This document shows positions 1,376 through 32,900 of a stretch of DNA of 64,000 nucleotides, piece after piece (positions within the stretch are counted from its first letter, which is position 1; every line of letters starts with the position of its first letter). Source of the DNA: Hypanus sabinus. Taxonomy: Eukaryota. A program made the translations under genes and the position numbers. The notes under the pieces were generated by a model, which saw only the letters and a program-made list of their open reading frames with translations, was not told where the DNA came from and searched no databases. The stretch is from NCBI RefSeq assembly GCF_030144855.1, contig NC_082713.1:53816001-53880000 (forward strand), given 5' to 3'.

Positions 1376-1558
1376 TCCAAGGAACCAGGTTGGATTGGGG
1401 AATATGAAGTGAAAAAAATTATCATTGATGGCTTAACAATTCTTTTCACAAAAGTGCTACCTTCAACATCACAGGTCATGACCCCTTTCAGGTCTTCTTT
1501 GGTACTTCACCCATGCAAATTCACCAGTAACTTTCTACATCAGCTGACCAAAGTCCAC

Positions 1559-2231
1559 TGTGCTGTCTTTACGACAGTTATTTAGTTTATAATATTTTCG
1601 CTTAGTAATTCATTCAATAGTATTTTCTAGTTAGAATTAGAAGTGTTTAAAGTATATTCATTGCATGTAAAATATATCGGCATGTGATGACGTCACATCC
1701 GGTTTCGCCGCGTCTTGTGGGAAAACACCGGTTTGAAATTAGCGCGAGGGTGGGGGCTTTCCACGAGGCTCACCTGAGCACAAGCAGTTTTGCAGGCATG
1801 AGAAATCACAGTGAGAGCAACGCTGTAAGTTAATAGATAATCGATATATTGAACTAAGATGTTAACGCTGATCCTGTTAGAGGTAACGACGGTAGATAAT
1901 GTTTATGCTTTCGTTAGTTAAAGAGTCGCGGATAGTTTGCATGGAAGTGTATTTAAAGTAGTCAATGGAGCAGGTAAACTCTCCCTGTATACTGCACCTT
2001 AGTGTAATGTAGTTATAGTCACCTTTGCAAGTATTTACACTTGAAATGTGATATTAAGGAAGGAACAAATACTGTATCAATCTTGTATTGTTTTATCAAC
2101 AGTTTTCACCATATGTTAATGTGAAGAGTGAACAGTAAATGGTTAATCTTACTGCGATCTGGTTTGCATTGGCTGTGGTTTATCCGGACGTTAAATTCGG
2201 CATTTCGTTACACCCGAAGGAGAACGTTACA
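1559..2231 (+). repeat. 5' LTR of BEL/Pao element (673 bp)
   Basis: Direct repeat of 4048-4717; starts tgtgctg, ends gttaca. Confidence 0.95.
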
Positions 2232-2269
2232 GTGAAAAAGCGGCATTATCAGGTGTTTCAAGTGCTGCA

Positions 2270-3985
2270 ATGTCAGCTCAATCCAGCATCAAGTCGACGC
2301 CGCCCAGCGACAAGGGCAGTAAACCGACATCAAGTAAGCCCACCCAGGCGTTATCAGGTGTTCCAAGTGCTGCAATGTCAGCTCGATCCGGGATCAAGTC
2401 GATGGCGCCCAGCGACAAGGGCAGTAGAACGACATCAAGTAAGTCCGCACAGGCAAGAGCCAAGGCAGAAGCCGCCAAGGTGCGACTGCATTACGCCAAA
2501 CAAGAAGCAGTTTTGAAAATTAAACTGGCTGCCAGAGAAGCCAAAAGGGCCGCCAGAAAGGCAGAAGCCGCCAAGGTGCTACTGCGTTACGCCAGACAAG
2601 AAGCAGTTTTGAAAATGAAACTGGCCACCAGAGAAGCCGAAATCCAGAAAGAAAGGGCCGCCAGAGAAGCCGAAAGGGCCGCCAGACAAAGAGAAGAGGC
2701 CGCCAGAGAAGCCGAAACCCAGTTGGAAATGGCAAAAATATCGACAAAGTTGCAAGTGCTGCAGCGAGAAAGAGAAGAAGAAGCTGCCATGGCGGAAGCA
2801 AAGTACATAGAAGAAGCTGAAGGGTCGCGTGATCTGACCGAAGCAAGATCTACTTTAGAAAGGACCAGACTGGAACGCACAAGCGACTATGTACAATCTC
2901 AAATAGACAGGCAGGCTCGTCTCCCCTCTCCATACGTATTCGATAACTTCCCCAGCTACGAGGAACCTCAGAGAGTCACGATTGCATCACATCCATACAA
3001 GGAAGGAAATTTACCCTCACGGCTCCGTGATGAAGTCAAGAATGAAAGAACCGACAACGCTCCTTCACCCCCACAACAGGACGGCGGGGAGGGAGAGGTT
3101 CACTCCAGGACAACAATTGTCAGCTCGAACTGTACAGAAGTTTGCGGTCAAACTCAGTCAAGCCGTTCTTGTTCCGAGATCTGCCTCACTGAGGTGTACC
3201 CTAAAGAAGCACAACAAGACATTACCAAGCGTAAAGTAACCGAAGAGACGCTAGGTCAGTCAGTTTTCGTTCAAACCGAGCACGGAAACAAACTTGCACA
3301 ATCAGCTCAAGATACCATTTCTTTAAAACCCAAAGACACCAAGGTCTTCAGAGATGAAGCAAATAATGGGGTTGCCCCATTACCCTTCAGAGAACCACGC
3401 CAGCGCTCACCAGATAACAAAGAGCAGGCAGTCAAACGGTTCACGTCCTTACGGAAAACCCAGAAAAGGAAACCTGAGATGCAGCAACACACCCGATTGG
3501 CTCACGAGGTACTGTGCACCCTAATGGCAGAGGTCACAGCCATTATAAACGCACAATCATTCCTACCTGTGTCTTCTGACCCAGAAAACCCCTTTATACT
3601 TTCGCCATCAACGCTCCTTATGCAGAAGGCAGGAGCACCTCCTCCACCAGGAGACTTCTCAGACAAGGATTTGTACACAAAGCAATGGAGACAAGTCCAG
3701 GCTCTGGCAAATCAGTTCTGGCCTCGCTGGAGACAAAAATATCTACCTTTGTTGCAACAGAGACAAAAGTGGACAGAACCCCGAAGGAATCTTCAAGTTG
3801 AAGACTTAGTCCTGCTCAGGGACAAGCAAGCCACCCGCAACAGCTGGCCAATGGCCAGAATCACTGCTACATTCCCTAGCGAGGATGGACATGTCAGGAA
3901 GATCGAATTGAAGACTACCGACCAAGGCGATGTGAAAAATTTACCAAGGGCCAGTTACAGAAGTTATTCTACTTCTACCCAATGA
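2270..3985 (+). CDS. 571-aa mosaic BEL/Pao gag-pol remnant: Gag N-terminal coiled coil, linker segments, and integrase C-terminal (DUF5641-like) domain
   Basis: Contains the motifs CTEVCG..SRSCS.ICL..VYP, LG.SVF.QT...NKLA.S..D, VAPLPFR.PR.R.PDN..QA..R..SL, HEVLCTLMAEVTAIINA and QWRQVQALANQFW.RW...YL..LQ.R.KW...RRNL.V.DLVLL.D....RN.WP.ARI...FPS.DG.VR. No protease, RT (YxDD) or RNase H motif is visible. Confidence 0.85.
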   Translation: MSAQSSIKSTPPSDKGSKPTSSKPTQALSGVPSAAMSARSGIKSMAPSDKGSRTTSSKSAQARAKAEAAKVRLHYAKQEAVLKIKLAAREAKRAARKAEAAKVLLRYARQEAVLKMKLATREAEIQKERAAREAERAARQREEAAREAETQLEMAKISTKLQVLQREREEEAAMAEAKYIEEAEGSRDLTEARSTLERTRLERTSDYVQSQIDRQARLPSPYVFDNFPSYEEPQRVTIASHPYKEGNLPSRLRDEVKNERTDNAPSPPQQDGGEGEVHSRTTIVSSNCTEVCGQTQSSRSCSEICLTEVYPKEAQQDITKRKVTEETLGQSVFVQTEHGNKLAQSAQDTISLKPKDTKVFRDEANNGVAPLPFREPRQRSPDNKEQAVKRFTSLRKTQKRKPEMQQHTRLAHEVLCTLMAEVTAIINAQSFLPVSSDPENPFILSPSTLLMQKAGAPPPPGDFSDKDLYTKQWRQVQALANQFWPRWRQKYLPLLQQRQKWTEPRRNLQVEDLVLLRDKQATRNSWPMARITATFPSEDGHVRKIELKTTDQGDVKNLPRASYRSYSTSTQ

Positions 3986-4047
3986 CTGATTAAGAGACTA
4001 AGTTTTGTACTCTGCTCATTGTGACCTTACGAAGGTCAAGCGGGGAG

Positions 4048-4717
4048 TGTGCTGTCTTTACGACAGTTATTTAGTTTATAATATTTTCGCTTAGTAATTC
4101 ATTCAATAGTATTTTCTAGTTAGAATTAGTGTTTAAAGTATATTCATTGCATGTAAAATATATCAGCATGTGATGACGTCACATCCGGTTTCGCCGCGTC
4201 TTGTGGGAAAACACCGGTTTGAAATTAGCGCGAGGGTGGGGGCTTTCCACGAGGCTCACCTGAGCACAAGCAGTTTTGCAGGCATGAGAAATCACAGTGA
4301 GAGCAACGCTGTAAGTTAATAGATAATCGATATATTGAACTAAGATGTTAACGCTGATCCTGTTAGAGGTAACGACGGTAGATAATGTTTATGCTTTCGT
4401 TAGTTAAAGAGTCGCGGATAGTTTGCATGGAAGTGTATTTAAAGTAGTCAATGGAGCAGGTAAACTCTCCCTGTATACTGCACCTTAGTGTAATGTAGTT
4501 ATAGTCACCTTTGCAAGTATTTACACTTGAAATGTGATATTAAGGAAGGAACAAATACTGTATCAATCTTGTATTGTTTTATCAACAGTTTTCACCATAT
4601 GTTAATGTGAAGAGTGAACAGTAAATGGTTAATCTTACTGCGATCTGGTTTGCATTGGCTGTGGTTTATCCGGACGTTAAATTCGGCGTTTCGTTACACC
4701 CGAAGGAGAACGTTACA
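4048..4717 (+). repeat. 3' LTR of BEL/Pao element (670 bp)
   Basis: By eye it differs from the 5' LTR only by one 3-bp indel and two substitutions. Confidence 0.95.
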
Positions 4718-5504
4718 TCCACTGTTGTTGGTATACTTTTCCCCCCATGAAGTATCATTCATCTGTTATTGAGCTACATTTGCTGTTTTCCATCACCTCA
4801 ATCTTCAAATTCTCTCCTTGTATTTGCCCACATTCACTGCTACAGATTCTACAAAACTGTCTAGTGTACTGGTCGGTCTATTGTACCCTTAGGCCATACC
4901 ACTTGGAAACAGGCCACTTAGACCATCCTTTCCTCCGTCCTTTAGAGATGACACCCAAGTATTTAAAAGCTGGATGTATGCTTCACAATTCAGGCTATTA
5001 AGACTCTCTGCACCCTAGATTTCTCTATTTATTTTTAGCCCTCTTCACAACTACTGTTTCCACTAGACTTTGGGCACCATTCCAAAAATCTCCTCCCTAA
5101 GCTTGTGCACCATTACTTTCTGAAGTATTTACAACAGTCATCATAGTTTATAAAGTGCCTTTAATTTGTAGCTTTTCTATCACTAAGGGAGTAGTCACGA
5201 TAATAAAAAAAATAGGCGTTTGGAAAATAGTGGAAGTGCTTGGTCTTGTGAAAAGAATTAAATGAAAATACACGCACACAAAACATATTTAATCCCATGA
5301 TCTATTTCACCATCCACAGCTACCTTAGAGGGTTGCCAAGTGTTTGTCCAACTGTTTACATAAGGCATGCTTTTCCAGATGAATTTCTTGTTGGGTCATT
5401 CAAAGCCTTTATGTCTCAACCACACGTAGAACTGGGAAGGAAGTCCCAAGCAGTATAGGACAACAAAATCACTTTTTAAAAATTAATATTAACACGTATA
5501 GCAG

Positions 5505-6230: not shown

Positions 6231-8334
6231 AGGTTTATTCAAGTAAGAATAATCTTGATGTCCTGGTCAATATTTAATCAACCACCCCCACAAAGAAATC
6301 AACTACAGTATACTTCATCCACCCCCACTGTTGTTTGCCTAGTCTAGCTGTTTGCAAATCATCTGAGGTGATACATTTACTCCAATTACACAAATTATTG
6401 TGCAAAGCACTTTAGGACATCGTGAGATGCAAGTGGGACCCTGGCTTTGTCTCTGGTAGCTCTGAAAATAGTTGAAAGCATTCTAAATTTGATGCAAATA
6501 AACTTTGTGCAAGGACATTTTCTAATGGATATGCCAGCAAATTCAAAAGTGGGGTATATATATTTTTAAGGAAGTGTTGCAGCATCAAAATTACCACTTC
6601 TCCTTTAAAAGCTCAACTAAACCTGTACAACTGGTGTTTACATCCATGACTGTATGTCCTCTATTACCTTGTGGGTTTTATGCGCAATGAGACCCATCCA
6701 GAAAAATATGGTTTAGTATCTGACCTTATTGCTATCCAATTTATAGATTACTTGTTAAAATGGCGATCCAAGCAAAAGCAGTTTCTGCTAGCCACAAATT
6801 ATGTAGGTATCCTCAAAGTAATGCATCACATCCAAAATCTACTCCATTCAGCTCCAAAGCGTAAATGGAAACAAACAACATTCTACATCAAAAATTCAGA
6901 GGTGACATGGTAGAAATTTAACCAGGCTCAACAGTGTGACTGTGTCAGAAGGGCAGGTGCCTTTTGCCTCTTCTGCATAAGTGAGCCTTTCACAGTCAAA
7001 CACAAATGTGATTCAGGCAATGGCTACACCAGCACTTGAAACAAAAATCAATAATGACAGTCTGAGGATACAGGACACAGAAAGGAATTTAGGAGGGAAA
7101 GGGTAGGGAAAAAACTGAACAAAACAAGGATAGAAAATAAAAGGGAAGGTAATACACAAAGTTAAAATGTGAGTGCTGAGACACAACAACACACTGTTGC
7201 AGCCTATAAAATGCTACACCATTTCCTGATATAGTTAACCATAACAGCCTAGCAAAACCTTACTTAATATCATTGTGTTAAAGTATTGCTATTCTACAGC
7301 CTTGTTTGACACAGAAAGCTATCACAGCACTTTTTGTATACACACAAGCTGAGTCCACTGACCTGCTATTTCATATAGTCCTGGATATTTTTTTTTGGTG
7401 AAAGGAAACTTCTTGCATTGCTGGTTTTCTGAGCTTAGTCTATTCTTCCGCCCACAGCACTTGTCAGCATTCGTCAGCAGTCACGTGGCATACTTTACCG
7501 CACTGCTGGTCAGTGGGTGGGACATCTGCTGAAGCAAGACAATACTCTCCTCTCCTTCAATCTACAGTGTGCCCAGAATCAGCAACCATTTAAAACGGGG
7601 CTTGTGACTTAACACAAATATAACACAAAAACATTAAATAAGGATTGCAACAAAAAAAAGCTTGAATCACATCAGAAGATAAAGCAAGAATCTGTAGCAG
7701 TGTTTTTCCTGCCCCTTTAAATAAATGTAATTGCTTTGAGGAAGAGTTAAAAATCCTCCATAAATGACAACTGAGTAACTGCTCGGTCACTGTAATGGAA
7801 AAAATGGGAACAAAAAGACCCACAATTGCTTCAAAATGCTCAATTATGTCATATGAGGCAGCTGACCCTCATATGACCTTTTGCGCTCTATCCTCCAATC
7901 ACTTGGGCTCGGTAGTGCCAGTTGTTCAAAAGTTAATGATCCTCTTTTTTGCATAAGTTATATTTTGTAACGTTAGTCAATCAGCTTTTTTTTAAACGTT
8001 ATTACACTTTTTGTCTGTTCTATCTCAGTGGAACTGTGAGGTTTAGTTCAGATCCTCCAGTTTTTTTTACTGACTAGGATACAAAAGTTAAATTTCCCAG
8101 AACTATGTCACTTAACAAACACGAGCACAACCATAAGCTATTCAGCAGCATGTACATAAATGTTATTTATATTATCTGCCATAATGCCTAAAATTTAATT
8201 AGTGTTCAGTTACTCAAACATTTTTACTGTAGACTTATGGGAGCCTTTAAGACTCCAATTTTAATGACCAGATTTTTCTTAATGGTGGACTTGGAGCTGG
8301 GTACTCCTGATGCCCCAGTGGTAAGGAAGCATGT

Positions 8335-8712
8335 CTCATTAAGATAATTTTGTTATATGTGTCATATAATTTGGGCTATCATGGTCTATGTCCCTAATTG
8401 TTCTTGGAAAATTTTTCTACATAAGTGGCTTGACATTGTTTTCTCCTGGGCAATGTCTTTACAAGAAGGGTGATCCCAGCCATTATCAATACTCTTCAGA
8501 GATTGCCTGATATCAGTGGTCGCATAACCAGGACTTGGGGTATGCACCAGCTGCTCGTACAATCATCTGCCAACTGCTCCCATGGTTTCACATGACCCTA
8601 GTCAAGGGGCTAAGCAGATGTTACACCTTGTCCAAGGGTAACCTTCACGTAGCAGAGGGAAAGAGTGCCTTCACCTCCTTTGTTAGGGGCATATCTCTAT
8701 CCTGCCACCCAA
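8335..8712 (-). mobile_element. SINE-like interspersed repeat (same family as 52085-52465 and 53915-54250)
   Basis: Shares blocks such as ccagccattatcaatactcttcagagattgcctg and caccttg(t/c)ccaagggt with the other two copies. Confidence 0.75.
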
Positions 8713-9030
8713 TAGGATAGTTAAGGCCAAAAGTATTTAGTTTTGAGCAAATAGGAAATAATGTTGGAGTAGTCTTTAACAGGTTTCAACCAATTGAGGT
8801 TAATAAGAAAGCTCACACAGCCAGAACATCCTGGACCTTCTGCACCCTGATAGAGGCAGATTCATGTGGTTAACGGATGGAAGAGTCCAGATTTTCCATA
8901 GGCTAAAGCAGTTATTAATGGATTCCAAGTTGACAGGTCTGCAGGGCACAGAACAATCAGAAGCCCTATGAGAGTAGTACAGCAAGTATTCTCAACCGTC
9001 ACCAGAATTACTAGAAAGAGGCAGACCTGT

Positions 9031-9852
9031 TAAGATGGCACTAAATGGCTACTCCTTTGCTTGCATTGTCAAAAACAGCTTTATTTCCATCTCTAATGTC
9101 TCTATTTTTCCCTTTCAGGGTTCTTTCGAAAACCCGACCTAGAGTTACACGCTGACTTTGGTTCGTTCAGGAATGGGGCCCGTTCTCGGGGTTTCAGGAC
9201 CGGCCATTGTTCGGCACCCCAAGGAGAGTGTCTTCAGCCTGCGAGTCCAGCTCGAATTTGATAGCCCAAAATCTCGGGGCTCTACAGGCAGGCAGATCGA
9301 GGGTCGATGTCACAGCAAGAAACCCATTTGTCATCAGGGGGGGTTAGGATATCTGCCGTGGGCCCGAAGACATGGGACCTTTGCAATCTTCAGGCACAGA
9401 GCTCAAAAAAAGTGACGGAACAGACTTCTAACACCTTAAACTAGCAAGTTGTTTGGTGTCTTCCCACTCACTGGGAAAATGGAGACACCTTTTTCTCCCT
9501 TATTAGGGAGAGAGAATCTGCAGTATGTCGAATGTCAGGTGTAATGCAAAGTCTTAGGGGTAACTGCAAGTCTGTCTTTCCTATTGCTTTGCTCACGCTT
9601 GAGTGCTTGGTGATGGTGCCATTGAAAGCTTTTTTTTGTCAGTGGAGGGAGGGGGGGGAATGGTTGCTCGCTGCCGCTTATGCACAGGAGGGAGGGGAGC
9701 TGGGGGGGGGGGGAACTTTGGGGCTCTTATGTTTTTCTGTCATTCATTCTTTGGGCCACTTCCGTTTTTGTGGATTATTGCAAAGAAAAATCATTTCAGG
9801 ATGTATATTGCATTCATTTCTCTGACATTAAATTGGACCTTTCAACCTTTGA
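9031..9852 (+). mobile_element. Non-coding interspersed repeat with LINE-like 3' tail
   Basis: Begins with aagatggc (YY1-like), is locally CpG-rich, has G-tracts and ends attaaa followed by acctttc/acctttg repeats. Related tails lie at 22100-22460 (-) and 33198-33295. Confidence 0.55.
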
Positions 9853-10439
9853 TTTCAATGTTTGGTGGCAAATGGCATTCATTAACATTCTTAGCCCATA
9901 CCATTCTTTCTTCCACAGTATACACTTATTTTTTTTCTGGCATTAAAGAATTCATCACCTTTTGAAGTTATAATCATTTAAAGAAACAAGTCACATGCCC
10001 TCCCAACACCATTGCTTATACCAACATCTTGTATCTCATCTCCATGTACAGTTTCACAAAAGTAATTTTACTGGTTGCAATCCTATCTATCCATGCTTCT
10101 CAGGATGATTCAATAACTTCAGCCAAGAAATACTTCTTTGGTACCCTTAGGCTAACCACCCATGAGGTAGTTTCACAATGGTGTTCCTTAGTTTAGTTTT
10201 GCTGGTTGCCTCTCAGAGATCAGGTAAAATTAACATACAAATCTACAGCAGCTCAATTTACACTAGAAAGCTTCAATCCAGTTTCTGTCCACCTTGTTTC
10301 CTACTGGAATCCACAAGTCATGGTTATAAACATTTGCATGACTGTAAACGCAATGGAGTCTGATCTCACTTCAAATGACCGCACTATCAATCTACAACCT
10401 TTACTTCTCATGGGCATCCCAAGTCAATGCTTTACTGAA

Positions 10440-11245
10440 AAAAAATCAGAATTAATATCACCGGGAAACATTCTGGAACTTGTTAACTTAGTGGCAGCAG
10501 TGCAATGCAATACACGATAATATAGAAAAAAGTACAAGCGTTTTTATTAAATAGTTAAGTTAAAAATAGTGCAAAATCAGAAAATAATAAAAGTGAGGTA
10601 GTGTTCATGGGTTCAATGAGCATTAAAGAATTGGATGGCAGAGGGGAAGAAGTTGGTCTTGAATTGCTGTGTGCTCGCTCCTTCAGGCTTCTCTACCTCC
10701 TTCCTTACATGACCTGGGTCTTTAATAACAGATGCCACATCTCTGAGACACTGCTCCTTGAAGTCTTGGATACTACGGAGGCTAGTACCCAAGATGGAGC
10801 TGACTAAATTTATAACCTTCTGGAGCTCCTTTCAATCCTGTGCAGTAGCTCCCCACATACTAGACAGTGATAGAGCCTGTCAGAATGCTCTCCATTGTAT
10901 CTCTGTAGAAGTTTGAATGTTTTAGGTGACAAACCAAATCTCCTCAAACTCCTAATGAAACATAGCCACCGTCTTGCCTTCTTCACAGCTGCATCGATAT
11001 GCTGGGACCAGGTTAAATCCCCAGAGAGCTTGACAACAAGGAACTTGGAATTGCTCACCCTCTCCACTTCCAGTCCCTCTATGATGATTGGTTAGTGTTC
11101 CCTTGTCTTACCCTTCCTGAAGTCCACCATCAGCTCTTAGGTCTTACTGGCATTAAGTGCAAGATTTGTTGCTACAACACTCAACTAACTAGTATATCTC
11201 GTTCCTGGAAGGCCTTTCATCTCCATCTGAGATTCTACCAACAAA
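10440..11245 (-). mobile_element. Rex1/Babar-like LINE 3' fragment
   Basis: ORF 10810-11067 encodes ERVSNSKFL...LTWSQHIDAAVKKARRWLCFIRSLRRFG; the tail ends in ctgatt-type repeats. Confidence 0.8.
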
Positions 11246-11854
11246 TACTAGTGTGGTCCAGTATATTAGAACAGAACTCTCATTATTCAGAAGGTTTTTA
11301 TCTAGGTGCACCACTCATTTTAACCATGTGTATCAAAATCAGTGCAGCACCCTGCAAGAGGGGTGAAATAACAACAATGCTACTTCAGCCACTGTTCAAG
11401 CACAAATGTTAAGAGGCAGAAATACAAGGTTTCCACTAGTTAAAACTGTAAGCATTTCTAATGATACTGTATCTCTAATATAGCAGAGACCATCCTTGTA
11501 TTTAAGTACACTGATACATGACAGTAATGGAGCTACCTTTTCATAGAGTCAAAATTCTCCAATAAGTAGAAGTGTTGTTTGTGAAATCACAAGCCAATGC
11601 GGAAGACACAAGCCAACAAGATGACAGGGCCAGTATCAATATATTATTAGTCATCACCAAAATTGGTGGTCAAGGCAAAATGCACCCACACCTCCAAGCT
11701 TCATTAACAGGACTTTTTTTTTAATTTATCCAGTTTCTTTTTTGTTTTAAAAAAAACCCCTAAAGTCTGCAAAAAGTGAGAAAAATATCACAGGCATCTT
11801 TGACAACCTTAGAAGCCACAATTCACAAGTATTCTGATGCTGAAATAAGCTCCA

Positions 11855-11995
11855 GTAACACAAGAGATGATGCAGATTTAGAAAATCCACAGCAACACAT
11901 AAAATGATGAAGGAATTCAGCAGGTTAAGCAACATCCATGGAAAGGAATGAACATTCAATTCTTTGGGCTTGGATCCTTCATCAAGACCCAAAAT
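11855..11995 (-). mobile_element. Short Penelope-derived repeat with decayed hammerhead core
   Basis: Minus strand reads gtcttgatgaaggatccaagcccaaag...ttcctttccatggatgttgc...cctgctgaattcc. Confidence 0.65.
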
Positions 11996-14481
11996 GCTGA
12001 CAATTTTAATTTGTAATAGAAACAGCAAAAAAAATGCACTTGCCAATGTGTCAATTAATTGAATGTCTAACTTTCTACCTTCCTGTTTTCCTTGAAAGCA
12101 TGTTTGGGAAAAAAAAACAGGATAAGATGTTATTATCTCTTGTGCCAATGGGTTGTGAGCACCTGCTCAAGACGGCCTTGATGCTGGAAGTGGCACAGGG
12201 TTGACACGGGTTGTCAAGTAGGCATCCTCCCTACTCTATGTTTCATCAGTAAGCACATCTGCAGAGGGTTCGATGTCATCTTCTGGCATCCCAGAGTTAT
12301 TCCCCCCCCCCCCCCCCCGCCCGTTGTGTCCTCCTACTCTCTTGGAACCCAGGAGAGGTCTTTTCACTTGATCTGAAGCCACTCCCTGCTTCTTTACACT
12401 GCCTCTGGTGATTTGCCATGGACTCTGCCCATGGATCACTAACTCCTTCAGCTATTTGGTGTTGGATACAACTATAAATCCCCAACAACCCACTTCCATA
12501 GGACAAACTTTGGTTTTCCATTCCCATCGTTGAGCTGCTAGATCTGCATAATACTTAACAATAGATCCAAGAAAGATGAATATGTGTAAACACAATCTAT
12601 AATCTCATTCCAGATGGCCACTGAGGGCAAAGCATCATAATTCAATATCTGCATAAAATCATTTCACAGCCAGATACACTAGGATCCAATCAAGGAGCTA
12701 CAGCCCAAGCAGATATTTCTTCCCACTTCCTTTATTTCCAAGTCCAACAGTATTGCAGTTCTAACAAATAGGCTAAATCAGCTGATATTTCATTTTGATG
12801 GGAGCTACCATTGCCTATCAGCTGATACATATTGTATTGGCCTGTTGGAAAAGTGAATAGTCATACATTTGTGTGTTGATGTTGGGAGTGGCACAGGGTT
12901 GACGTGGGGTTTTCATGTGGGCACCCTCCTTCCTCATCGAGTGTTTTGAGCTGTATCATCCTGCATTTAAACCACTCAGTGTAGAACATATACATCAGAT
13001 AAGTGTCCATAAAATAACTTAAACCCAAAGAATTTATTTTTCCACACCTATGCCTAACATGATGAATTTTGCTTCTGTACCTTCCAGAGTCGGTAACCAT
13101 TAAAAGTAGCAATTAATAAGGTACATACAAAAATAATTATTTTTGTTTACACGAACATGTGAGAACACTAATATTGTTTCATTATAAGTAGATATTGAAT
13201 ATTGATCCTCAGTGGTCATATTCTTAAAGGTTTATTGCCAGTGGATAAAGCAGTTCACGTTCAAGTTTTACAATACGAATCACGATTTTCATGCTACAAG
13301 TTTTTCTCATTAATTTTGATGTATATACACAATTCAAACTATCTATTTTATTACAAGTGTAATTTTTAAAATATGCAACCATCAATTTAACCATGAAATT
13401 TAATTTTTGATATTAGAATAGCATCTGGAAGGAAAACTTCCAAATGAATCACTAACAATCCTGTTACTATGATATCAAACTATGTTTGGCTCCTGCCAAG
13501 AACGATTACTATACTTTCAAATCCTAACACAAACGGCATTTGGCCCATCTTGCTAAGTCAACCCTCAGTTTCCTGCAATCTATTCTGTTGAATGCCCATT
13601 AACTCTTCCTTCTTCCGCTGCACCAGTCACACAGGCTTTATCAGCAGTAAAAGATGGGAGAATAAGATTTGGTTTTTAAACCTGAAATACATCAACAGAA
13701 GGATATCAGAAACACATTCAATAGCAAATTTCACAAAGGAATTTAAGAAGTATTTCCCCTTGAATCAGAGATCAGGGACTAACGGGACTAGGACCAAGTC
13801 TCTTGTGTCTCCACTAACTAGCTGGTCCCATTAAAAAGCCTCATGGGCATAAAGGCTGAATGCCTCATTCTTCATTTTATAATTTTATATTCCCACCTCA
13901 GCCAAGCCAATTATCAAAGAAGGCTGCTCAACTCTACTCAAATACATCCTAAACAGGATCTATTGGGTGAATAAGCATCACCCATAAATAATGTTTAAAA
14001 ACAATCCTAATGAACTTTTCAAAAACTTTCAAGGAGATGTGTTTAAAATAGTTTTCTGAAATCTAAATATGGCCATGGAATTCCATTGTTATTAACAATA
14101 TACTTGAAGAGAGTCAATCCAATAGAAAACTGTATGAATAAAATTGAGTAGAACTTTGCAACTGTATTTAAAGCTGCATATCCAGAAAATATATGCCACA
14201 GTCATTTTAGGATAGGCTATATTGATGACTGACAGATTGTTCTACAAGATGTTCACTCAGGCAAGAGAGAATGTGGATGTAGCATAACAGGTATTAATCA
14301 ATTATATTAAAATTACTTTGTTCTTTTCTGTCAGAAATTGGCATTGCTACATTTTATATTTAGAAATTGTTACTGTTTCAGTCTTCTGTTCATCTATGAT
14401 AGGAGTCTTCAAATATTGTTACATGTACCATATCCAGAAGAAAGTGCGCCAGTGGATAAAGCTAGACCTCATCCATCACAT

Positions 14482-15641
14482 ACACAATAGACAGTAGGTG
14501 CAGGAGTAGGCCATTCGGCCCTTCTAGCCAGCACCGCCATTCACTGTGATCATGGCTGATCATACACAATCAGTACCCCGTTCCTGCCCTCTCCCCATAT
14601 CCCTTGACCCCGCTATCTATCTAACTCTCTCTTGAATGCATCCAGAGACTTGGTCTACACTGCCTTCTGGGGCAGAGCATTCCACATATCCACCACTCTC
14701 TGGGTGAAAAAGTTTTTCTGCATCTCTGTTCTAAATGGCCTACCCCTTATTCTTAAACTGTGGCCTCTAGTTCTGGACTCACCCATCAGCAGGAACATGC
14801 TTCCTGCCTCCAGTGTGTCCAATCCCTTAATAATCTTATATGTTTCAATCAGATCCCCTCTCATCCTTCTAAATTCCAATGCATACAAGCCCAGTCGCTC
14901 CAATCTTTCAACATATGACAGTCCCGCCATTCCAGGAATTAACCATGTGAACCTACATTGCACTCACTCAATAGCAAGAATGTCCTTCCTCAAATTTGGA
15001 GACCAAAACTGCACACAATACTCCAGGTGTGGTCTCACCAGGGCCCTGTACAGCTGCAGAAGGATCTCTTTACTCCTATACTCAATTCCTCTTGTTATAA
15101 AAACCAGCATGCCATTAGCTTTCTTCACTGCCTGCTGTACCTGCATGCTTGCATTCATTGACTGATGTACAAGAACACCTAGATCTCATTGTACTTCCCC
15201 TTTTCCTAACTTGACACCATTCAGATAGTAATCTGCCTTCCTATTTTTGCCACCAAAGTGGATAACCTCACATTTATCCACATTAAACTGCATCTGCCAT
15301 ACATTTGCCCACTCACCCAACCTGTCCAAGTCACCTTGCATTCTCATACCATCCTCCTGACATTTCACACTGCCACTCAGCTTTGTGTCATCAGCAAATT
15401 TGCTAATGTTACTTTTAATCCCTTCATCTAAATCATTAATGTATATTGTAAACTGCTGCAGTCCCAGCACCGAACCTTGCGGTACCCCACTGGTCACAGC
15501 CTGCCATTCCGAAAGGGACCCGTTAATCACCACTCTTTGTTTCCTGTCAGCCAGCCAATTTTCAATCCATGTCAGTACTCTGCCCCCAATACCATGTGCC
15601 CTAATTTTGCCCACTAATCTCCTATGTGGGACTTTATCAAA
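14482..15641 (-). mobile_element. 5'-truncated CR1 LINE (RT C-half and 3' UTR) with in-frame stops
   Basis: Three consecutive same-frame ORFs (15186-15671, 14964-15158, 14655-14963) carry FDKVPH, GVPQGSVLG, KFADDTK and LVRPHLEYCVQFWSP. The 3' UTR matches the copy at 27390-29140. Confidence 0.95.
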
Positions 15642-27389: not shown

Positions 27390-29140
27390 TAGACAATAGA
27401 CAATAGGTGCAGAAGTAGACGATTTGGCCCTTCGAGCCTGCACTGCCATTTTGAGATCATGGCTGATCATCTACTATTAATACCCAGTTCCTGCCTTGTC
27501 CCCATATCCCTTGATTCCCCTATCCATAAGATACCTATCTAGCTCCTTCTTGAAAGCATCCAGAGAATTGGCCTCCACTGCCTTCCAAGGCAGTGCATTC
27601 CAGACCCCCACAACTCTCTGGGAGAAGAAGTTTTTCCTTAACTCTGTCCTAAATGACCTACCCCTTATTCTCAAACCATGCCCTCTGGTACTGGACTCTC
27701 CCAGCATCTGGAACATATTTCCTGCCTCGATCTTGTCCAATCTCTTAATAATCTTATATGTTTCAATCAGATCCCCTCTCAATCTCCTTAATTCCAGCGT
27801 GTACAAGCCCAGTCTCTCTAACCTCTCTGCATAAGACAGTCCAGACATCCCAGGAATTAACCTCGTGACTCTACGCTGCACTTCCTCTACAGCCGGGATG
27901 TCCTTCCTTAACCCTGGAGACCAAAACTGTACACAATACTCCAGGTGTGGTTTCACCAGGGCTCTGTACAAATGCAAGAGGATTTCCTTGCTCTTGTACT
28001 CAATTCCCTTTGTAATAAAGGCCAACATTTCATTAGCCTTCTTCACTGCCTGCTGCACTTGCTCATTCACCTTCAGTGACTGATGAACGAGGACTCCTAG
28101 ATCTCTTTGTATTTCTCCCTTACCTAACTTTACACCGTTCAGATAATAATCTGCCTTCCTGTTCTTATTCCCAAAGTGGATAACCTCACACTTATTCACA
28201 TTAAACGTCATCTGCCAAGTATCTGCCCACTCACCCAGCCTATCCAAGTCACCCTGAATTCTCCTAACATTCTCATCACATGTCACACTGCCACCCAGCT
28301 TAGTATCATCAGCAAATTTGCTGATGTTATTCTCAATGCCTTCGTCTAAATCGTTGACGTAAATCGTAAACAGCTGTGGTCCCAAAACCGAGCCCTGTGG
28401 CACCCCACTAGTCACCACCTGCCATTCCGAGAAATACCCATTCACCACTACCCTTTGCTTTCTATCTGCCAACCAGTTTTCTATCCATGTCAATGTCTTC
28501 CCCCCAATGCCATGAGCTCTGATTTTACCCACCAATCTCCTACGTGGGACCTTATCAAATGCCTTCTGAAAATCAAGGTACACTACCTCCACTGGATCTC
28601 CCCCGTCTAACTTCCTGGTTACATCCTCGAAAAACTCCAATAGATTAGTCAAGCATGATTTACCCTTGGTAAATCCATGCTGGCTCAGCCCAATCCTATC
28701 ACTGCTATCTAGATATGCCACTATTTCATCTTTAATAATGGACTCTAGCATCTTCCCCACCACCGATGTCAGGCTGACAGGTCGATAGTTCTCTGTTTTC
28801 TCCCTGCCTCCTTTCTTAAAAAGTGGGATAACATTAGCCATTCTCCAATCCTCAGGAACTGATCCTGAATCTAAGGAACATTGGAAAATGATTACCAATG
28901 CATCCGCAATTTCCAGGGCCAAATCCTTTAGTACCCTAGGATGCAGACCATCTGGACCTGGGGATTTGTCAGCCTTCAGTCCCATCAGTCTACTCATCAC
29001 TGTTTCCTTCCTAATGTCAATCTGTTTCATTTCCTCTGTAACCCTATGTCCTTGGCCCATCCATACATCTGGGAGATTGTTTGTGTCTTCCTTAGTGAAG
29101 ACAGATCTGAAGTACTTATTAAATTTTTCTGCCATTTCTC
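27390..29140 (-). mobile_element. Young 5'-truncated CR1 LINE with uninterrupted RT frame
   Basis: Plus-strand tail tagacaatagacaatagg; the ORF2 frame is open from the truncation point (EMAEKFNKYF) to the stop. Confidence 0.95.
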
Positions 29141-29201
29141 TGTGATATGGTGATATAACATGAAATGATGTGCCAGTTCCTGATTGGAGAGCACTGAACA
29201 T
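27477..29201 (-). CDS. 574-aa CR1 reverse transcriptase ORF (no endonuclease domain; N-terminal ~20 aa from flanking LTR sequence)
   Basis: Motifs KSPGPDG, NYRPVSLTS, SQHGF, YLDFQKAFD, GVPQGSVLGP, KFADDTK, LVKPHLEYC, all stop-free. Confidence 0.85.
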   Translation of the reverse strand: MFSALQSGTGTSFHVISPYHREMAEKFNKYFRSVFTKEDTNNLPDVWMGQGHRVTEEMKQIDIRKETVMSRLMGLKADKSPGPDGLHPRVLKDLALEIADALVIIFQCSLDSGSVPEDWRMANVIPLFKKGGREKTENYRPVSLTSVVGKMLESIIKDEIVAYLDSSDRIGLSQHGFTKGKSCLTNLLEFFEDVTRKLDGGDPVEVVYLDFQKAFDKVPRRRLVGKIRAHGIGGKTLTWIENWLADRKQRVVVNGYFSEWQVVTSGVPQGSVLGPQLFTIYVNDLDEGIENNISKFADDTKLGGSVTCDENVRRIQGDLDRLGEWADTWQMTFNVNKCEVIHFGNKNRKADYYLNGVKLGKGEIQRDLGVLVHQSLKVNEQVQQAVKKANEMLAFITKGIEYKSKEILLHLYRALVKPHLEYCVQFWSPGLRKDIPAVEEVQRRVTRLIPGMSGLSYAERLERLGLYTLELRRLRGDLIETYKIIKRLDKIEAGNMFQMLGESSTRGHGLRIRGRSFRTELRKNFFSQRVVGVWNALPWKAVEANSLDAFKKELDRYLMDRGIKGYGDKAGTGY

Positions 29202-29995: not shown

Positions 29996-32900
29996 CCTAC
30001 TGCAACTCAGCCGGCACACCGCCTGGTGCACTTCAGTTAACCAGGCACCCAGCAGGACTAAAAACAAAACCTGTCGAAGGACGGATGAACTCCTTGTGAG
30101 TCAACGGCCACCTACTGTCTGTGTGAGGAGTGGCGTGCCACACAGTCTTTCGTTTTGTGCCTTGTAGGGCATTATGATGACAGACAACCCAGCAAACCCT
30201 ATACTTCCAGAGCCGGGAGTGCTCAGGAAGTCTGCACAGCGCCCAGACCCTGGTCTAGACAGGTAGTACAAAGATGCAACCTCAAACCCTACGGGGAGAG
30301 TTGAGTCCAACAAGGGGGCCAAGCGAAGTGCGCCTGTTTTGCGCTGTAAAGTAAAAACAATCATCTCAACTTTCATACACCATCCGCCTCTTGCCTTAAT
30401 ACAGAGCTGGCATCACAGGCAAGCAGATATGAGATCTCCATCCTGGGGATCCAAGAACACCATCATGTACATCCAGATGAAGAGATAAGGTTCACAGAGG
30501 TAGAGGGGTTGCACCTCGTCAGCTCGTCCGCATGGAGAGAGTCGACGACGATGTCAGCACAAGGCAGAGGAGGGCTGATGTTGAACCGCAAGGCGAAGAA
30601 GGCACTGAGGTGCATAGTCTCTGTCAGTGACAGAATCCTTACTGAGGAATTCGACGGAAACCCGGCGACCTCTGTCATCATCTGTTAATCCCTGCATATC
30701 TGCAGCAAGGAGAAGGAGGTGGAGACCTTCTACAGTAAACTTCATGAAGTTGTCACTTCAATACCTGCACATAACTTCCAGCCTGTGCTTGGCGATTTTA
30801 ATGCCCAGGTCGGACTGGAAGATGTTCCATACTCATACCACGACTTTACCAACAGAAATGGACAATACCTTGTTGATTTCACCCAGGAACACAGTCTCAT
30901 TGCCGCCAACACAAAATTCAAGAAGCGAGTGGTAAACTGTGGACATACAAAAACAGAGCCTCCCTCAACAGGAAACATCTCAACTACATCCTCGTAAGAA
31001 CAAAATGGCGTAATTGTGTGATCAACACAGAAGCCTACAGCACCTTCAGCTCGGTCAGTTCTGACCACAGAGGAGTATCAAAGCAAGTGAGACTGAGCCT
31101 GCCGCAACCCAAAGCCACAGGTCCCAAGGAGAAGATGGACTGGAAGGCATTCTCTTCACAACCTATTCTTCAAGCCCAGTACACTGTGGAAGTGAGAAAT
31201 CGCTTCGGCCCGCTGGAGAGGGAGGAGGAAGAGACTGCCACCAACCGCCATCAGCGGCCTATAGATACACACACAGATGCAACAAAGAGTCTGACTACTG
31301 TGAAGCGAATCAAAAAGAGCCGGATCTCAAAACATCCTGACGTCGCAGCAAGAAATGTGGTCAATGCTTGTCATGCCGAACATAGAAGGAGCGAAACAGA
31401 AGAGCTCAGAGACAAGTTCAAGACAGCAAAGAAGAATCTCTTTGCCACATACGACTGACTGAAGGAAGAGGAACTAGCTGAGAGGATTAGAGGGGTAGAG
31501 GCTGCTAATGAAGACCAGCAGCTTGGAGAAACATGGCGCCTGGTCAACGAGATCAGCAGACGGAAGAAGTCCCCATCAGGTCAAATAAGAGGTCAAACAG
31601 CAGAGGATCGTGTCCAGACATGGTTTACCCACTTCAAGAAGCTGCTGGGAAGCCCTCCAATGATCACGGAAGAAGAAGAGGACATACCCACAATACTAAC
31701 GCAAATCAACATCGATGACCACCATTGGGGAACTGAAGAAGGCCAAATATGCTCTCAAACAGGGCAACAGCGCTGGACCAGATAGAATAGCACCAGATGT
31801 CCTGAAGAATGACGACCTGGATGACATTGTGCTGGACATATGTAATACGGCACTGACGAAAGGCGACAAACCAGAACAGTGGTCACTCTCAAACATTGTC
31901 CCTGTTCCCAAGTCTGGATCCCTCACGAAGACAGATAACAACCACGGTATCAGCTTGACCTGCATCTTAGCAAAGCTGTACAATCGGATGATCTTGAACA
32001 GGTTTCGTATCACCATTGACCCTGAGCTAAGATTCAATCAGAATGGTTTTTGGTAGAAGCTCACAACAGTAATGCAAATACTTGCTCTCCGTAGAATCAT
32101 CGAGGAAGTCAAGAAGAACAACCTACAGCCGCGCTTACTTTCATCGATTTTCACAAAGCTTTTGACTCCATTCACCGAGGTAAAATGCTGAAGATCCTGA
32201 AAGCTTACAGAGTGCCAGACCATCTATTGAGAGCAATAGAGTCCAGCTATACCAAGACCACAGTAAAAGTTGTATCACCAGATGGAGAAACAGCAGTGTT
32301 CGAGTTCCTGGCTGGTGTGCTGCAAGGAGACACTCTGGCACCCTACATGTTTATAATCATCGTCAAGCTCTACGTCAAGCTACCAAAGTTCATGACAAGC
32401 TTGGTTTTACTATAAAACCAGGACAAACTAAAAGGGTCAGACCAGTTACGCTTACAGATCTCAATTTTGCAGATGACATAGTCCTGCTCTCTGACCAGAT
32501 TGAGGAAGCACAGCAGCTACTGATAAAAGTGAAAATTGAGTGCAATAAAGTTGGACTTCACCTAAATGCTAAAAAGAGAGAGTACATGGCGTTCAACTGC
32601 AATGAAGGTACTCTCAAGACTGTAAAGAATGATACCATTAAGAAAGTCTTAGACTTTAAGGACCTCGGGTCAAGAATGATGAGTTTGGAGAAGGACATAA
32701 ATACAGGGAAGGCGCTGGCGTGGAGGGCTATGAATGACGTGAAGGGAATCTGGAGGTTGAACCTGACCAGAGGGCTCAAAAAGAGGATCTTCATAGCAGT
32801 CAGAGTTCCTTCTCACATACAGATGTGAGACGTGGACGCTCACCAAGACCATGTGAAAGGCACTAGATGGTTGCTATACACGAATGCTCCGGATGGCTCT

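What the first reader, a model, noticed from the sequence alone, without database searches (positions are those of the whole stretch)
2270..3985. Miniature BEL/Pao element that deleted all its enzymes but kept one continuous 571-aa ORF
Seen: the 1.8-kb internal region is almost entirely one stop-free ORF, stitched from separated parts of a BEL polyprotein: Gag coiled coil, pre-protease CTEVCG..SCS linker, post-protease/pre-RT linker (VAPLPFR), and integrase C-terminal domain. Known: autonomous BEL elements carry capsid/zinc knuckle, protease and RT-RH-IN core between these blocks. Inference: at least three large deletions (near DNAP|SPP, VYPK|EAQ and EMQQH|TRLAHE at ~3485) each preserved the frame, about 1 in 27 if random. 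This suggests selection to stay translatable, for example NMD avoidance, cis-packaging by a mini-Gag, or a defective-interfering/restriction-like protein. Caveat: an extra A near 3937 shifts the last ~17 codons (the canonical-looking KIYQGPVTEVILLLPND* is in another frame), so the exact protein may not matter.
Basis: partly seen in the sequence, partly recalled or inferred. Interest (0 to 1): 0.78.

Follow-up and report, generated by a model that had tools for sequence, protein, structure and literature searches.

The report
Mini BEL retrotransposon keeping fused ORF
This is a recently inserted 3.2-kb copy of an enzyme-less stingray BEL/Pao retrotransposon. It belongs to a family of over 100 copies whose single reading frame is stitched from leftover polyprotein pieces, and that protein sequence now drifts almost neutrally, so it is a tidy example of a known kind of genomic parasite.

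Summary
Window 1559-4717 is a complete LTR element: LTRs of 673 and 670 bp that are 99.3% identical, TG..CA ends and a 5-bp TCCAC duplication. A 571-codon ORF fills 94% of its interior.

The ORF joins four polyprotein pieces: the Gag N-terminal coiled coil, the pre-protease linker, the post-protease linker and the integrase C-terminal domain (DUF5641). Three deletions of 1104, 573 and 2607 bp separate them. All are multiples of three, and each junction shows microhomology.

The deletions were stepwise, because intermediate forms exist in Hypanus sabinus, and the largest deletion also occurs in Hemitrygon akajei. At least 81 RefSeq protein clusters of H. sabinus, misnamed "plectin-like" and similar, are copies of this family. 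Seven copies checked at DNA level, this one included, have their own 5-bp duplications and nearly identical LTRs.

The selection inference is only partly supported. dN/dS among mini copies is about 0.92, against 0.25-0.38 in the protease-bearing intermediate family. A subfamily with a 53-bp frameshifting deletion has still spread. Two tests show shared variants depleted of truncating changes and of changes at conserved sites (p about 0.03 each), and my sample is biased towards intact copies.

The closest analogue is the mouse IAP IΔ1 element. An unbiased genome census is the deciding test.

The parts
1554..1558 (+). Target-site duplication, left copy (TCCAC)
   Evidence: The same 5 bases directly flank both LTR outer ends. 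Ten of the eleven other family elements examined have their own exact 5-bp duplication; L010's differs by one base.
1559..2231 (+). 5' LTR, 673 bp, TG...CA ends
   Evidence: 99.26% identical to 4048-4717. 95-96% identical to the LTRs of the full-length element L004.
2232..2269 (+). Short leader between the LTR and the start codon (primer-binding-site region; the tRNA was not identified)
   Evidence: Read directly. It is contiguous with the LTR in the 95.3% match to L004 7226-8015.
2242..2451 (+). Tandem duplication of 105 bp (35 codons) that includes the start codon, giving two in-frame ATGs (M1 and M36)
   Evidence: 89% identity between the units. Some family members start with the single-unit form.
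2270..3985 (+). 571-codon fusion ORF
   Evidence: 81-94% identical over 97% of its length to many H. sabinus RefSeq proteins.
2270..3049 (+). Block A: Gag N-terminus. A disordered S/T/K/P-rich head is followed by a long helix (aa 57-185) with 96-bp and 21-bp internal repeats.
   Evidence: BLASTP to the Gag-bearing proteins P0085 and P0201. AlphaFold2 gives a single helix at aa 57-185 with pLDDT above 90. Repeats.
3050..3057 (+). Junction 1: 1104 bp are missing relative to L004 and L005 (capsid-like DUF1759 domain and Zn knuckle); in frame; imperfect microhomology
   Evidence: DUF1759 is found in the deleted stretch of L001, L004 and L005.
3058..3203 (+). Block B: linker that precedes the protease (CTEVCG...SCS motif)
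   Evidence: Predicted disordered.
3204..3206 (+). Junction 2: 573 bp (191 codons, the protease domain) are missing; in frame; AAG microhomology
3207..3479 (+). Block C: linker between protease and RT (VAPLPFR motif)
   Evidence: Predicted mostly disordered.
3480..3489 (+). Junction 3: 2607 bp (869 codons) are missing relative to L004, covering RT, the Pfam 'Peptidase_A17' region and the rve integrase core; in frame; 8-10 nt of imperfect microhomology
   Evidence: The same junction is present in the Hypanus intermediates L001 and L005 and in Hemitrygon L006.
3490..3934 (+). Block D: integrase C-terminal region. Pfam DUF5641 covers aa 471-552 (nt 3680-3925).
   Evidence: The AlphaFold2 model of this region has helices followed by a small five-stranded barrel with pLDDT 87-91. 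Foldseek gives only weak matches to Tudor/chromo/KOW-type barrels, best E 9e-3.
3935..3939 (+). A5 run carrying one extra A that is private to this copy. It shifts the last 17 codons.
   Evidence: Alignment with seven other copies, all of which have A4.
4031..4047 (+). Purine-rich tract directly upstream of the 3' LTR (candidate polypurine tract)
   Evidence: Read directly. Identical in all eight aligned copies, including the full-length L004. Its function is inferred.
4048..4717 (+). 3' LTR, 670 bp
4718..4722 (+). Target-site duplication, right copy (TCCAC)

Best explanation
Window 1554-4722 is one young insertion of a non-autonomous BEL/Pao LTR retrotransposon family of the Atlantic stingray (Hypanus sabinus or a very close relative).

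The family arose from an autonomous 7.3-kb element by three successive internal deletions. Each has short microhomology at the junction, as expected from template switching during reverse transcription (inferred).
- First, RT-RNaseH-integrase core was lost, giving a Gag-protease-linker-integrase-tail element of about 4.7 kb.
- Then the capsid/Zn-knuckle part of Gag was lost.
- Then the protease was lost.

The mini element keeps the LTRs, the leader and the purine tract of the autonomous form. It must therefore be copied and integrated by enzymes supplied in trans (inferred).

Its 571-codon ORF is a leftover fusion: disordered head, long coiled-coil helix, about 160 disordered linker residues, then the integrase C-terminal barrel. 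The frame is open because each founding deletion was in frame and because the copies are young. The amino-acid sequence is no longer under detectable purifying selection. Any selection against truncation is at most weak.
For: Structure:
- LTRs, TG..CA ends and TSD.
- Block-by-block homology and junction lengths of 1104, 573 and 2607 bp.
- A full-length partner, L004 7226-14551, with LTRs 95-96% identical to the mini's. It carries DUF1759, RVT_1, Peptidase_A17, rve and DUF5641.

Stepwise origin:
- Forms with only the largest deletion: L001, L005, P0201 (47 members), and Hemitrygon L006, P0180 and P0229. The junction is identical in all those checked at DNA level (L001, L005, L006).
- Protease-bearing forms with two of the deletions: P0020, P0063.

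Real and recent transposition:
- Seven mini copies (window, L007-L012) lie on different chromosomes. Six have an exact 5-bp TSD of their own; L010's differs by one base.
- Within-element LTR divergence is 0-1.2%, and zero in L009. Copies differ from one another by 2-6%.

Relaxed protein constraint:
- Pooled dN/dS is 0.92 overall (Gag N-terminus 0.93, post-protease linker 0.91, integrase tail 0.80).
- Variable codon columns: 22 synonymous-only against 109 amino-acid-changing. This does not differ from neutral (p 0.12), and w<=0.3 is rejected (p 4e-15).
- For contrast, the intermediate family compared between the two stingray genera gives w 0.25-0.38 in capsid, protease, linkers and integrase tail.
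- The autonomous copy keeps 45 of 45 BEL-wide conserved residues of the tail. The Hypanus deletion derivatives P0201 and P0003 have lost 4.

A 53-bp frameshifting deletion lineage has spread widely, and L012 is a bona fide insertion of it.
Against: - Three of three founding deletions are in frame, and so is a fourth, independent large deletion in the sister subfamily L002. By chance this is 1/27 or 1/81, though both figures are subject to ascertainment.
- Truncating events are depleted among variants shared by two or more clusters (1 shared against 10 singleton) compared with missense variants (62 against 87). Fisher one-sided p 0.029.
- Substitutions at conserved sites of the integrase tail are mostly singletons (11 singleton, 3 shared, against 21 and 25 elsewhere; Fisher two-sided p 0.037, one-sided 0.030).
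- These points hint that lineages with a damaged frame or tail replicate less well.
- No intact autonomous helper was found. The only annotated pol-bearing copy of this family has gag and pol in different frames and older LTRs (1.5% divergence).
- All copies except the window's were reached through annotated proteins, so the share of intact copies in the genome is unknown.
Confidence: 0.6

Rival explanations
1. The frame itself is selected but the protein sequence is not. RNAs that can be translated from end to end replicate better. Possible reasons are that a long untranslated 3' stretch marks an unspliced RNA for nonsense-mediated decay, or that translation brings the RNA to helper proteins in cis. 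On this view only in-frame deletion derivatives found successful families, while amino acids drift freely.
For: - All three founding deletions are in frame, as is an independent one in L002.
- dN/dS near 1 coexists with many open frames across copies that differ by 2-6%, a divergence that arose in replicating lineages.
- Truncating variants are under-represented among shared variants (p 0.029).
- The one frameshift lineage that did spread moves the stop to about 50 codons before the normal end of the ORF, so it tests this idea only weakly.
- Ordinary non-autonomous LTR elements are described as full of stops and frameshifts (PMC9744471).
Against: - The sample is ascertained through annotated proteins of 314-999 aa, so lineages with early stops were invisible.
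- About one lineage in five stays stop-free by chance at this depth.
- The p values are marginal and post hoc.
- The broken intermediate L001 has a proper TSD and LTRs only 0.75% diverged.
- No expression or decay data are available.
Confidence: 0.3
2. The fusion protein has a function of its own. It might be a mini-Gag whose coiled coil joins helper Gag assemblies and whose integrase tail binds nucleic acid, promoting packaging of its own RNA in cis as reported for the IAP IΔ1 fusion protein. Or it might be a dominant-negative, defective-interfering protein that damps the helper, as Ty1 p22 does.
For: - The two foldable parts, the long helix and the C-terminal barrel, are retained whole, and the deletions remove whole domains.
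- There is a weak depletion of conserved-site changes among shared variants in the tail, and dN/dS there is 0.80.
- In the intermediate family the tail shows w 0.29 between genera although the integrase core is gone.
- Precedents exist: PMC6466679 and PMC4599808.
Against: - dN/dS of 0.9 in the helix and linker blocks rejects constraint of the strength seen in the intermediates.
- The derivatives have lost 4 of 45 conserved tail residues.
- A lineage lacking the last ~50 residues, with most of the predicted barrel gone, still spreads.
- The capsid and Zn-knuckle parts that normally assemble particles and bind RNA are absent.
Confidence: 0.08
3. These are host genes, either domesticated Gag-derived genes or true plectin-like, intersectin-like or myosin-like genes as RefSeq names them.
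For: RefSeq names and gene models.
Against: - Each copy examined sits between two LTRs with a 5-bp TSD at a different genomic site.
- There are dozens of paralogues with dN/dS about 0.9.
- The only Pfam domain is the BEL/Pao integrase tail. The names reflect coiled-coil composition.
Confidence: 0.01

Closest known systems
Mouse IAP IΔ1 (1Δ1) elements
   Same: An internally deleted, non-autonomous LTR element whose deletion is in frame and creates a new Gag-Pol fusion ORF. It depends on full-length relatives in trans, yet is the most successful subtype (PMC6466679).
   Different: IΔ1 has one 1.9-kb deletion and belongs to a class II ERV. Here there are three successive deletions in a BEL/Pao element, and no capsid or enzyme part remains. 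The IΔ1 fusion protein was shown to act in cis; here nothing is known about the protein, and its sequence drifts near-neutrally.
LARD/TRIM elements and degenerate non-autonomous subfamilies such as wheat RLC_Angela δn
   Same: They keep the LTRs and cis signals of an autonomous partner, lack enzymes, are mobilised in trans and can outnumber their partner.
   Different: Those elements have no ORF, or a coding region riddled with stops and frameshifts (PMC9744471). Here a single frame spans 94% of the interior in most annotated copies.
Ty1 p22/p18 (self-encoded Gag-derived restriction factor)
   Same: A truncated Gag-derived product of a retrotransposon that could interact with full-length Gag (PMC4599808).
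   Different: p22 is the capsid (C-terminal) half of Gag and comes from a subgenomic transcript of the autonomous element. The stingray ORF lacks the capsid part and sits in a separate, mobile, multi-copy element. No inhibitory activity has been tested.
BARE2 of barley
   Same: A family that depends on a related autonomous family (BARE1) for a missing function while keeping most cis features (PMC3735527; the details are from my own knowledge of the literature).
   Different: BARE2 keeps pol and lacks a translatable Gag, which is the reverse of what is retained here.

Membership tests
BEL/Pao LTR retrotransposons (Belpaoviridae) | Two LTRs with TG...CA ends, flanked by a short (4-6 bp) target-site duplication | tested here: met
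   LTRs at 1559-2231 and 4048-4717 with a 5-bp TCCAC duplication. Eleven related elements have 5-bp duplications too, exact in ten and one base off in L010.
BEL/Pao LTR retrotransposons (Belpaoviridae) | Coding sequence homologous to the BEL/Pao polyprotein (Gag DUF1759, protease, RT, 'Pao peptidase' PF05380 region, rve, DUF5641) | tested here: met
   The mini has DUF5641, E 4e-26. The partner L004, with the same LTR, has DUF1759, RVT_1, PF05380 (E 1.5e-45), rve and DUF5641 in that order. The nearest relatives are 1,900-aa fish BEL polyproteins.
BEL/Pao LTR retrotransposons (Belpaoviridae) | RT sequence that groups with BEL/Pao in a phylogeny | not tested
   The mini has no RT. No tree was built for the partner's RT; only Pfam and best-hit evidence is available.
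Non-autonomous in-frame deletion derivative (IAP IΔ1-like) | Shares LTRs and flanking cis regions with an autonomous element of the same genome | tested here: met
   95-96% identity to L004 across the LTR, leader, first Gag codons, integrase tail, 3' UTR and purine tract.
Non-autonomous in-frame deletion derivative (IAP IΔ1-like) | Lacks RT and integrase core, so cannot move by itself | tested here: met
   2607 bp covering RVT_1, PF05380 and rve are absent. Pfam finds only DUF5641.
Non-autonomous in-frame deletion derivative (IAP IΔ1-like) | The deletion(s) preserve the frame and create a fusion ORF | tested here: met
   1104, 573 and 2607 bp are missing, giving one 571-codon ORF.
Non-autonomous in-frame deletion derivative (IAP IΔ1-like) | Amplified by transposition after the deletion | tested here: met
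   Seven mini copies share the same junctions but have different insertion sites and TSDs. There are 72 mini-type and 9 protease-bearing annotated protein clusters.
Non-autonomous in-frame deletion derivative (IAP IΔ1-like) | The fusion protein promotes the element's own mobilisation in cis | not testable with these tools
   Needs expression and mobilisation assays. The sequence evidence (dN/dS 0.92) does not favour a strongly constrained protein.
LARD / TRIM (non-coding non-autonomous LTR elements) | No open reading frame in the internal region | tested here: not met
   The ORF covers 1716 of 1816 internal bases.
Domesticated Gag-derived host gene or restriction factor (Fv1-like) | A fixed host locus without LTRs or TSD, under purifying or positive selection | tested here: not met
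   LTRs and a TSD are present in every copy examined. There are many paralogues, and dN/dS is about 0.9.

The most novel reading that the evidence does not exclude
In this BEL/Pao lineage an open frame running the whole length of the RNA is itself required for efficient replication, whatever it encodes. The reason would be protection from nonsense-mediated decay or translation-coupled capture by helper proteins. Only in-frame deletion derivatives could then found families, and the ORF persists as a 'translated spacer' while its amino acids drift.
Probability: 0.28. Interest if true: 0.65.

Novelty: new member of a known kind. Interest (0 to 1): 0.4.

Why it matters
There are three reasons.

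1. **Annotation.** At least 81 RefSeq protein clusters of the Atlantic stingray are ORFs of this retrotransposon family. They carry names such as plectin-like, intersectin-like, caldesmon-like and GRB10-interacting GYF protein 2-like, and should not be counted as host genes.

2. **A deletion series that can be studied.** The family offers a clean, apparently still active natural series: the full-length element, a Gag-protease form, a coiled-coil-protease form, and the mini. Protein constraint falls stepwise along it, from w about 0.3 to about 0.9. This is a convenient system for asking what a non-autonomous LTR element really needs.

3. **An open question about reading frames.** If a genome-wide census showed that only in-frame derivatives succeed, it would give rare evidence that translatability matters for retroelement RNA, separately from the protein it encodes.

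As it stands, the element is a well-documented example of a known phenomenon.

Tried and rejected
- **Other copies nearby.** I found none in the window and none in the roughly 20-kb flanks fetched around the mini copies L007-L011. So I obtained no unbiased sample of unannotated copies.
- **Genome census.** None of the searchable DNA collections holds a stingray genome, so a census was impossible.
- **Large HMMER search.** I did not run it. The word search and the family scans had already identified the protein, and the claim does not rest on an absence of relatives.
- **Rfam.** Nothing in the whole window reached a gathering score.
- **Fold search.** The C-terminal model gave only weak matches to Tudor/chromo/KOW-type small barrels (best E 9e-3). 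This is compatible with an integrase-type C-terminal barrel but proves nothing.
- **Literature.** Searches for a described non-autonomous BEL/Pao family or a stingray transposon study covering this element found nothing specific.
- **Primer-binding site.** The bases after the 5' LTR do not start with the usual TGG, and I did not identify the priming tRNA.
- **Analyses left out by rule.** Tree-based analyses that need consensus or ancestral sequences were not run. I used only pairwise and site-pattern counts.
- **Gene model of P0044.** It does not translate collinearly from its locus. I used only the collinear reading of the locus, which reproduces the protein's C-terminal 60 residues and stop, and I did not reconstruct the spliced model or join any exons.
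- **Human sequence.** No contig looked human.
- **Rejected ideas.** The antisense ORFs at 2520-2880 are by-products of the repetitive GAAGCC-rich coiled-coil region. The host-gene reading is refuted by the LTRs and TSDs.
Full report
**What is in the window**

It lies inside a complete LTR element. The LTRs are at 1559-2231 (673 bp) and 4048-4717 (670 bp). They are 99.26% identical, start with TG and end with CA.

Five bases, TCCAC, are duplicated on either side, at 1554-1558 and 4718-4722. The interior is 1816 bp, of which the ORF takes 1716. A purine-rich tract (4031-4047) abuts the 3' LTR.

Pfam recognises only DUF5641, the C-terminal domain of BEL/Pao integrases, at aa 471-552 (E 4e-26). 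No second copy lies in the window, and Rfam finds nothing.

**Where it comes from**

A word search with the ORF returned at least 81 protein clusters from the RefSeq annotation of Hypanus sabinus (Atlantic stingray). About 144 member sequences stand behind them. Most are 480-640 aa long, and 42 of them cover 97% of the query at 81-94% identity.

Their RefSeq names include plectin-like, intersectin-1-like, caldesmon-like and GRB10-interacting GYF protein 2-like. These names reflect only the coiled-coil composition. The window is therefore from H. sabinus or a very close relative (inference).

Almost all full-length members end in ...LLLPND. The window copy has one extra A in an A-run (A5 at 3935-3939, against A4 in seven other copies).

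**Mapping the junctions**

I compared the window with three reference forms:
- Longer stingray proteins.
- L004, a full-length element (7226-14551, 7.3 kb). Its LTRs are 95-96% identical to the mini's. Its coding content is DUF1759 in gag, then RVT_1, PF05380, rve and DUF5641 in pol.
- L005, an intermediate element with an intact 1097-codon ORF.

The result is as follows.

| Part of the mini ORF | Corresponds to | What is missing after it |
|---|---|---|
| aa 1-~260 | Gag N-terminus | Junction 1 (3050-3057): 1104 bp, the capsid-like DUF1759 domain and Zn knuckle |
| aa ~260-312 | Linker before the protease | Junction 2 (3204-3206): 573 bp, 191 codons, exactly the protease |
| aa 312-~405 | Linker between protease and RT | Junction 3 (3480-3489): 2607 bp, 869 codons, covering RT, the PF05380 region and the integrase core |
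| aa 404-556 | Integrase C-terminal region | none |

All three lengths are multiples of three. Each junction shows 3-10 nt of imperfect microhomology. This is what template switching by reverse transcriptase would leave (inference).

**The deletions were separate events**

- Elements with only the largest deletion (Gag-protease-linker-integrase tail, 1044-1097 aa) form a family of their own. In Hypanus these are L001, L005 and P0201 with 47 members. In another stingray genus, Hemitrygon akajei, they are L006, P0180 and P0229 with 32 members. The junction is identical in L001, L005 and L006, the members checked at DNA level.
- Proteins such as P0020 and P0063 carry the first and third deletions but still have the protease.
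- I saw no form with RT that also had the first or second deletion.
- The most economical order is therefore: third deletion, then first, then second.
- A sister subfamily (L002, LTRs about 75% identical) carries a different large deletion, pol aa 463-920, which is also in frame.

**Are the copies real transpositions, and how old are they?**

I fetched the DNA of six other mini copies (L007-L012). Each is 2.9-3.35 kb long and has two LTRs and its own 5-bp duplication (one base off in L010). Each lies on a different chromosome or at a different site.

LTR-to-LTR divergence within these mini copies is 0 to 1.2%. It is zero in L009 and 0.3% in the window copy. The longer relatives L001, L004, L005 and L006 likewise have 5-bp duplications; their LTRs differ by 0.15%, 0.75%, 1.5% and 2.4% (L006 also has 29 gap columns). 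Copies differ from one another by 2-6%. Most of the differences between copies therefore arose in replicating lineages, not after insertion.

**Selection on the protein**

Codon alignment of the six collinear mini copies (window, L007-L011; Nei-Gojobori counting; the window's shifted tail excluded) gave these pooled dN/dS values:

| Region | dN/dS |
|---|---|
| Whole ORF | 0.92 |
| Gag N-terminus | 0.93 |
| Post-protease linker | 0.91 |
| Integrase tail | 0.80 |

By columns, 22 variable codon columns are synonymous-only and 109 change the amino acid. The neutral expectation is 23% synonymous. This does not differ from neutral (p 0.12), but w<=0.3 is rejected at p 4e-15 and w<=0.5 at 3e-7.

By contrast, the intermediate family compared between the two stingray genera (L005 against L006) gives w 0.35 for capsid, 0.26 for protease, 0.25-0.38 for the linkers, 0.29 for the integrase tail and 0.57 for the Gag N-terminus.

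The autonomous copy keeps all 45 residues of the tail that are at least 90% conserved across fish and invertebrate BEL elements. The Hypanus deletion derivatives have lost four of them. Constraint on the protein thus falls stepwise as the element shrinks, and it is not detectable in the mini.

**Selection on the frame**

About 4.8-5.3% of random substitutions in this ORF would create a stop. A lineage at the family's depth (about 0.02 per site) would therefore stay stop-free with probability about 0.2, before counting indels. Many open copies are therefore not in themselves proof of selection.

My sample is also biased. Every copy except the window's was found through an annotated protein of 314-999 aa.

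Within that limit I ran two site-pattern tests on 53-71 mini proteins:
- Truncating events after the first about 300 codons: 10 are private to one cluster and 1 is shared. Missense variants: 87 private and 62 shared. Fisher one-sided p 0.029, two-sided 0.051.
- Substitutions at conserved sites of the tail: 11 private and 3 shared. At other sites: 21 private and 25 shared. Fisher two-sided p 0.037, one-sided 0.030.

Both tests point to some disadvantage for damaged lineages, but weakly.

Against a strict requirement, one truncating event has clearly propagated. A 53-bp deletion shifts the frame inside DUF5641 and ends the protein in ...NGQNHCYIP. It is present in at least 9 clusters whose contigs indicate at least 7 chromosomes, in both protease-less and protease-bearing forms. 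Its member L012 has normal LTRs (0.9% diverged) and a GGCTG duplication.

**The protein**

AlphaFold2, using an alignment of family members, predicts the following:
- a disordered S/T/K/P-rich head (aa 1-56);
- one uninterrupted helix at aa 57-185 with pLDDT above 90, the coiled-coil part;
- a second helix;
- about 160 disordered residues, which are the two linkers;
- a C-terminal helical region ending in a small beta-barrel.

A separate model of the tail, built with 40 diverse BEL sequences, gives the barrel pLDDT 87-91. Foldseek matches it only weakly to Tudor, chromo, PWWP and KOW barrels, best E 9e-3. This is the fold class of retroviral integrase C-terminal domains (my own knowledge), but the match is not significant.

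**Who mobilises it**

The mini shares with L004 the LTRs, the leader, the first Gag codons, the integrase tail, the 3' UTR and the purine tract, at about 95% identity. An L004-type element is therefore the natural helper (inference).

L004 itself has gag (7936-9846) and pol (9677-13822) in different frames. The cause is a 23-bp length difference in the pre-protease linker. Its LTRs are 1.5% diverged.

A word search with its pol found no other Hypanus protein of this family in the 760-2417 aa range. The source of enzymes for the very recent insertions is thus not identified.

**Verdict**

The structural interpretation is right: a miniature BEL/Pao element made by three independent in-frame deletions, and present in many copies.

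The functional inference, selection to remain translatable, is possible but not shown. The protein sequence drifts near-neutrally, youth explains much of the intactness, one frameshifted lineage spreads, and the positive signals are marginal and ascertainment-prone.

The closest described analogue is the mouse IAP IΔ1 element. It is a non-autonomous in-frame gag-pol deletion derivative that out-competes its full-length relatives, and its fusion protein acts in cis (PMC6466679). Typical non-autonomous LTR elements, by contrast, have no coding region or a ruined one (PMC9744471).

I rate this a new member of a known kind, of moderate interest. A census of all copies in the assembly would decide the open question.

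Noticed in passing
H. sabinus RefSeq proteins P0001-P0081; window 2270-3985 is an unannotated or variant member: At least 81 protein clusters (about 144 sequences) annotated as plectin-like, intersectin-1/2-like, caldesmon-like, myosin-9-like, GRB10-interacting GYF protein 2-like and so on are ORFs of this retrotransposon family. The names come from coiled-coil composition.
   Followed up: yes
L004 9677-13822 (pol of the full-length stingray element): Its best non-stingray matches are 1,900-aa BEL polyproteins of otophysan teleosts (Pangasianodon 79%, Danio 78%, Pimephales 77% identity over 97% of 1381 aa). That is closer than many teleost-to-teleost pairs in the same list (57-70%). For a cartilaginous against a bony fish this suggests horizontal transfer.
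   Followed up: no
window 3049-3489 compared with L004, L002, L005 and L006: Mosaic similarity. The mini is about 95% identical to L004 in the LTRs, the Gag start and the integrase tail, but only 76-80% identical in the two linker blocks. Those blocks are 84-93% identical to elements whose LTRs are only 75-81% identical (L002, L006). dS between L005 and L004 is 0.05-0.10 in capsid, protease and tail but 0.51 in the post-protease linker. This points to recombination between BEL lineages.
   Followed up: partly
Proteins P0043, 44, 48, 55, 60, 66 (no protease) and P0059, 64, 74 (with protease); locus L012 ~4700: The same 53-bp frameshifting deletion in DUF5641 occurs in both protease-less and protease-bearing forms. 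Either recombination shuffled it between them, or the protease deletion happened on more than one background.
   Followed up: partly
L005 against L006 (Hypanus against Hemitrygon intermediates): In a family that has lost the integrase core, the integrase C-terminal domain and the adjoining linker still show dN/dS 0.25-0.29 between genera. Either the tail has a role independent of integration, or exchange with autonomous copies keeps it conserved.
   Followed up: no
window 1980-2270; ORF 2139-2516 (+): If transcription starts downstream of the TATA-like TATTTAAAG near 1950, the leader holds five upstream ATGs. One opens a 125-codon ORF that overlaps the main start in another frame. The autonomous element shares this leader.
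   Followed up: no
window 27477-29201 (-), 50515-51060 (+), about 30600-33200 (+): Other retroelement remains. There is a 574-codon ORF with an RVT_1 domain (E 1.5e-30), a 181-codon RVT_1 fragment (E 6.6e-19), and a degraded stretch that looks like a non-LTR element, with a run of broken ORFs of 90-146 codons and a GC and AT-skew profile like that of the mini element. The assignment of the last stretch is by eye only and no domain scan was run. None is related to the mini element at DNA level.
   Followed up: partly
L002 6977-13700 and L003 5380-11697: Sister BEL subfamilies in the same genome are also represented by internally deleted copies. L002 has an in-frame loss of pol aa 463-920. L003 is a degraded copy missing about pol 290-537. 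Deletion derivatives seem to be the rule for this clade in the stingray.
   Followed up: partly
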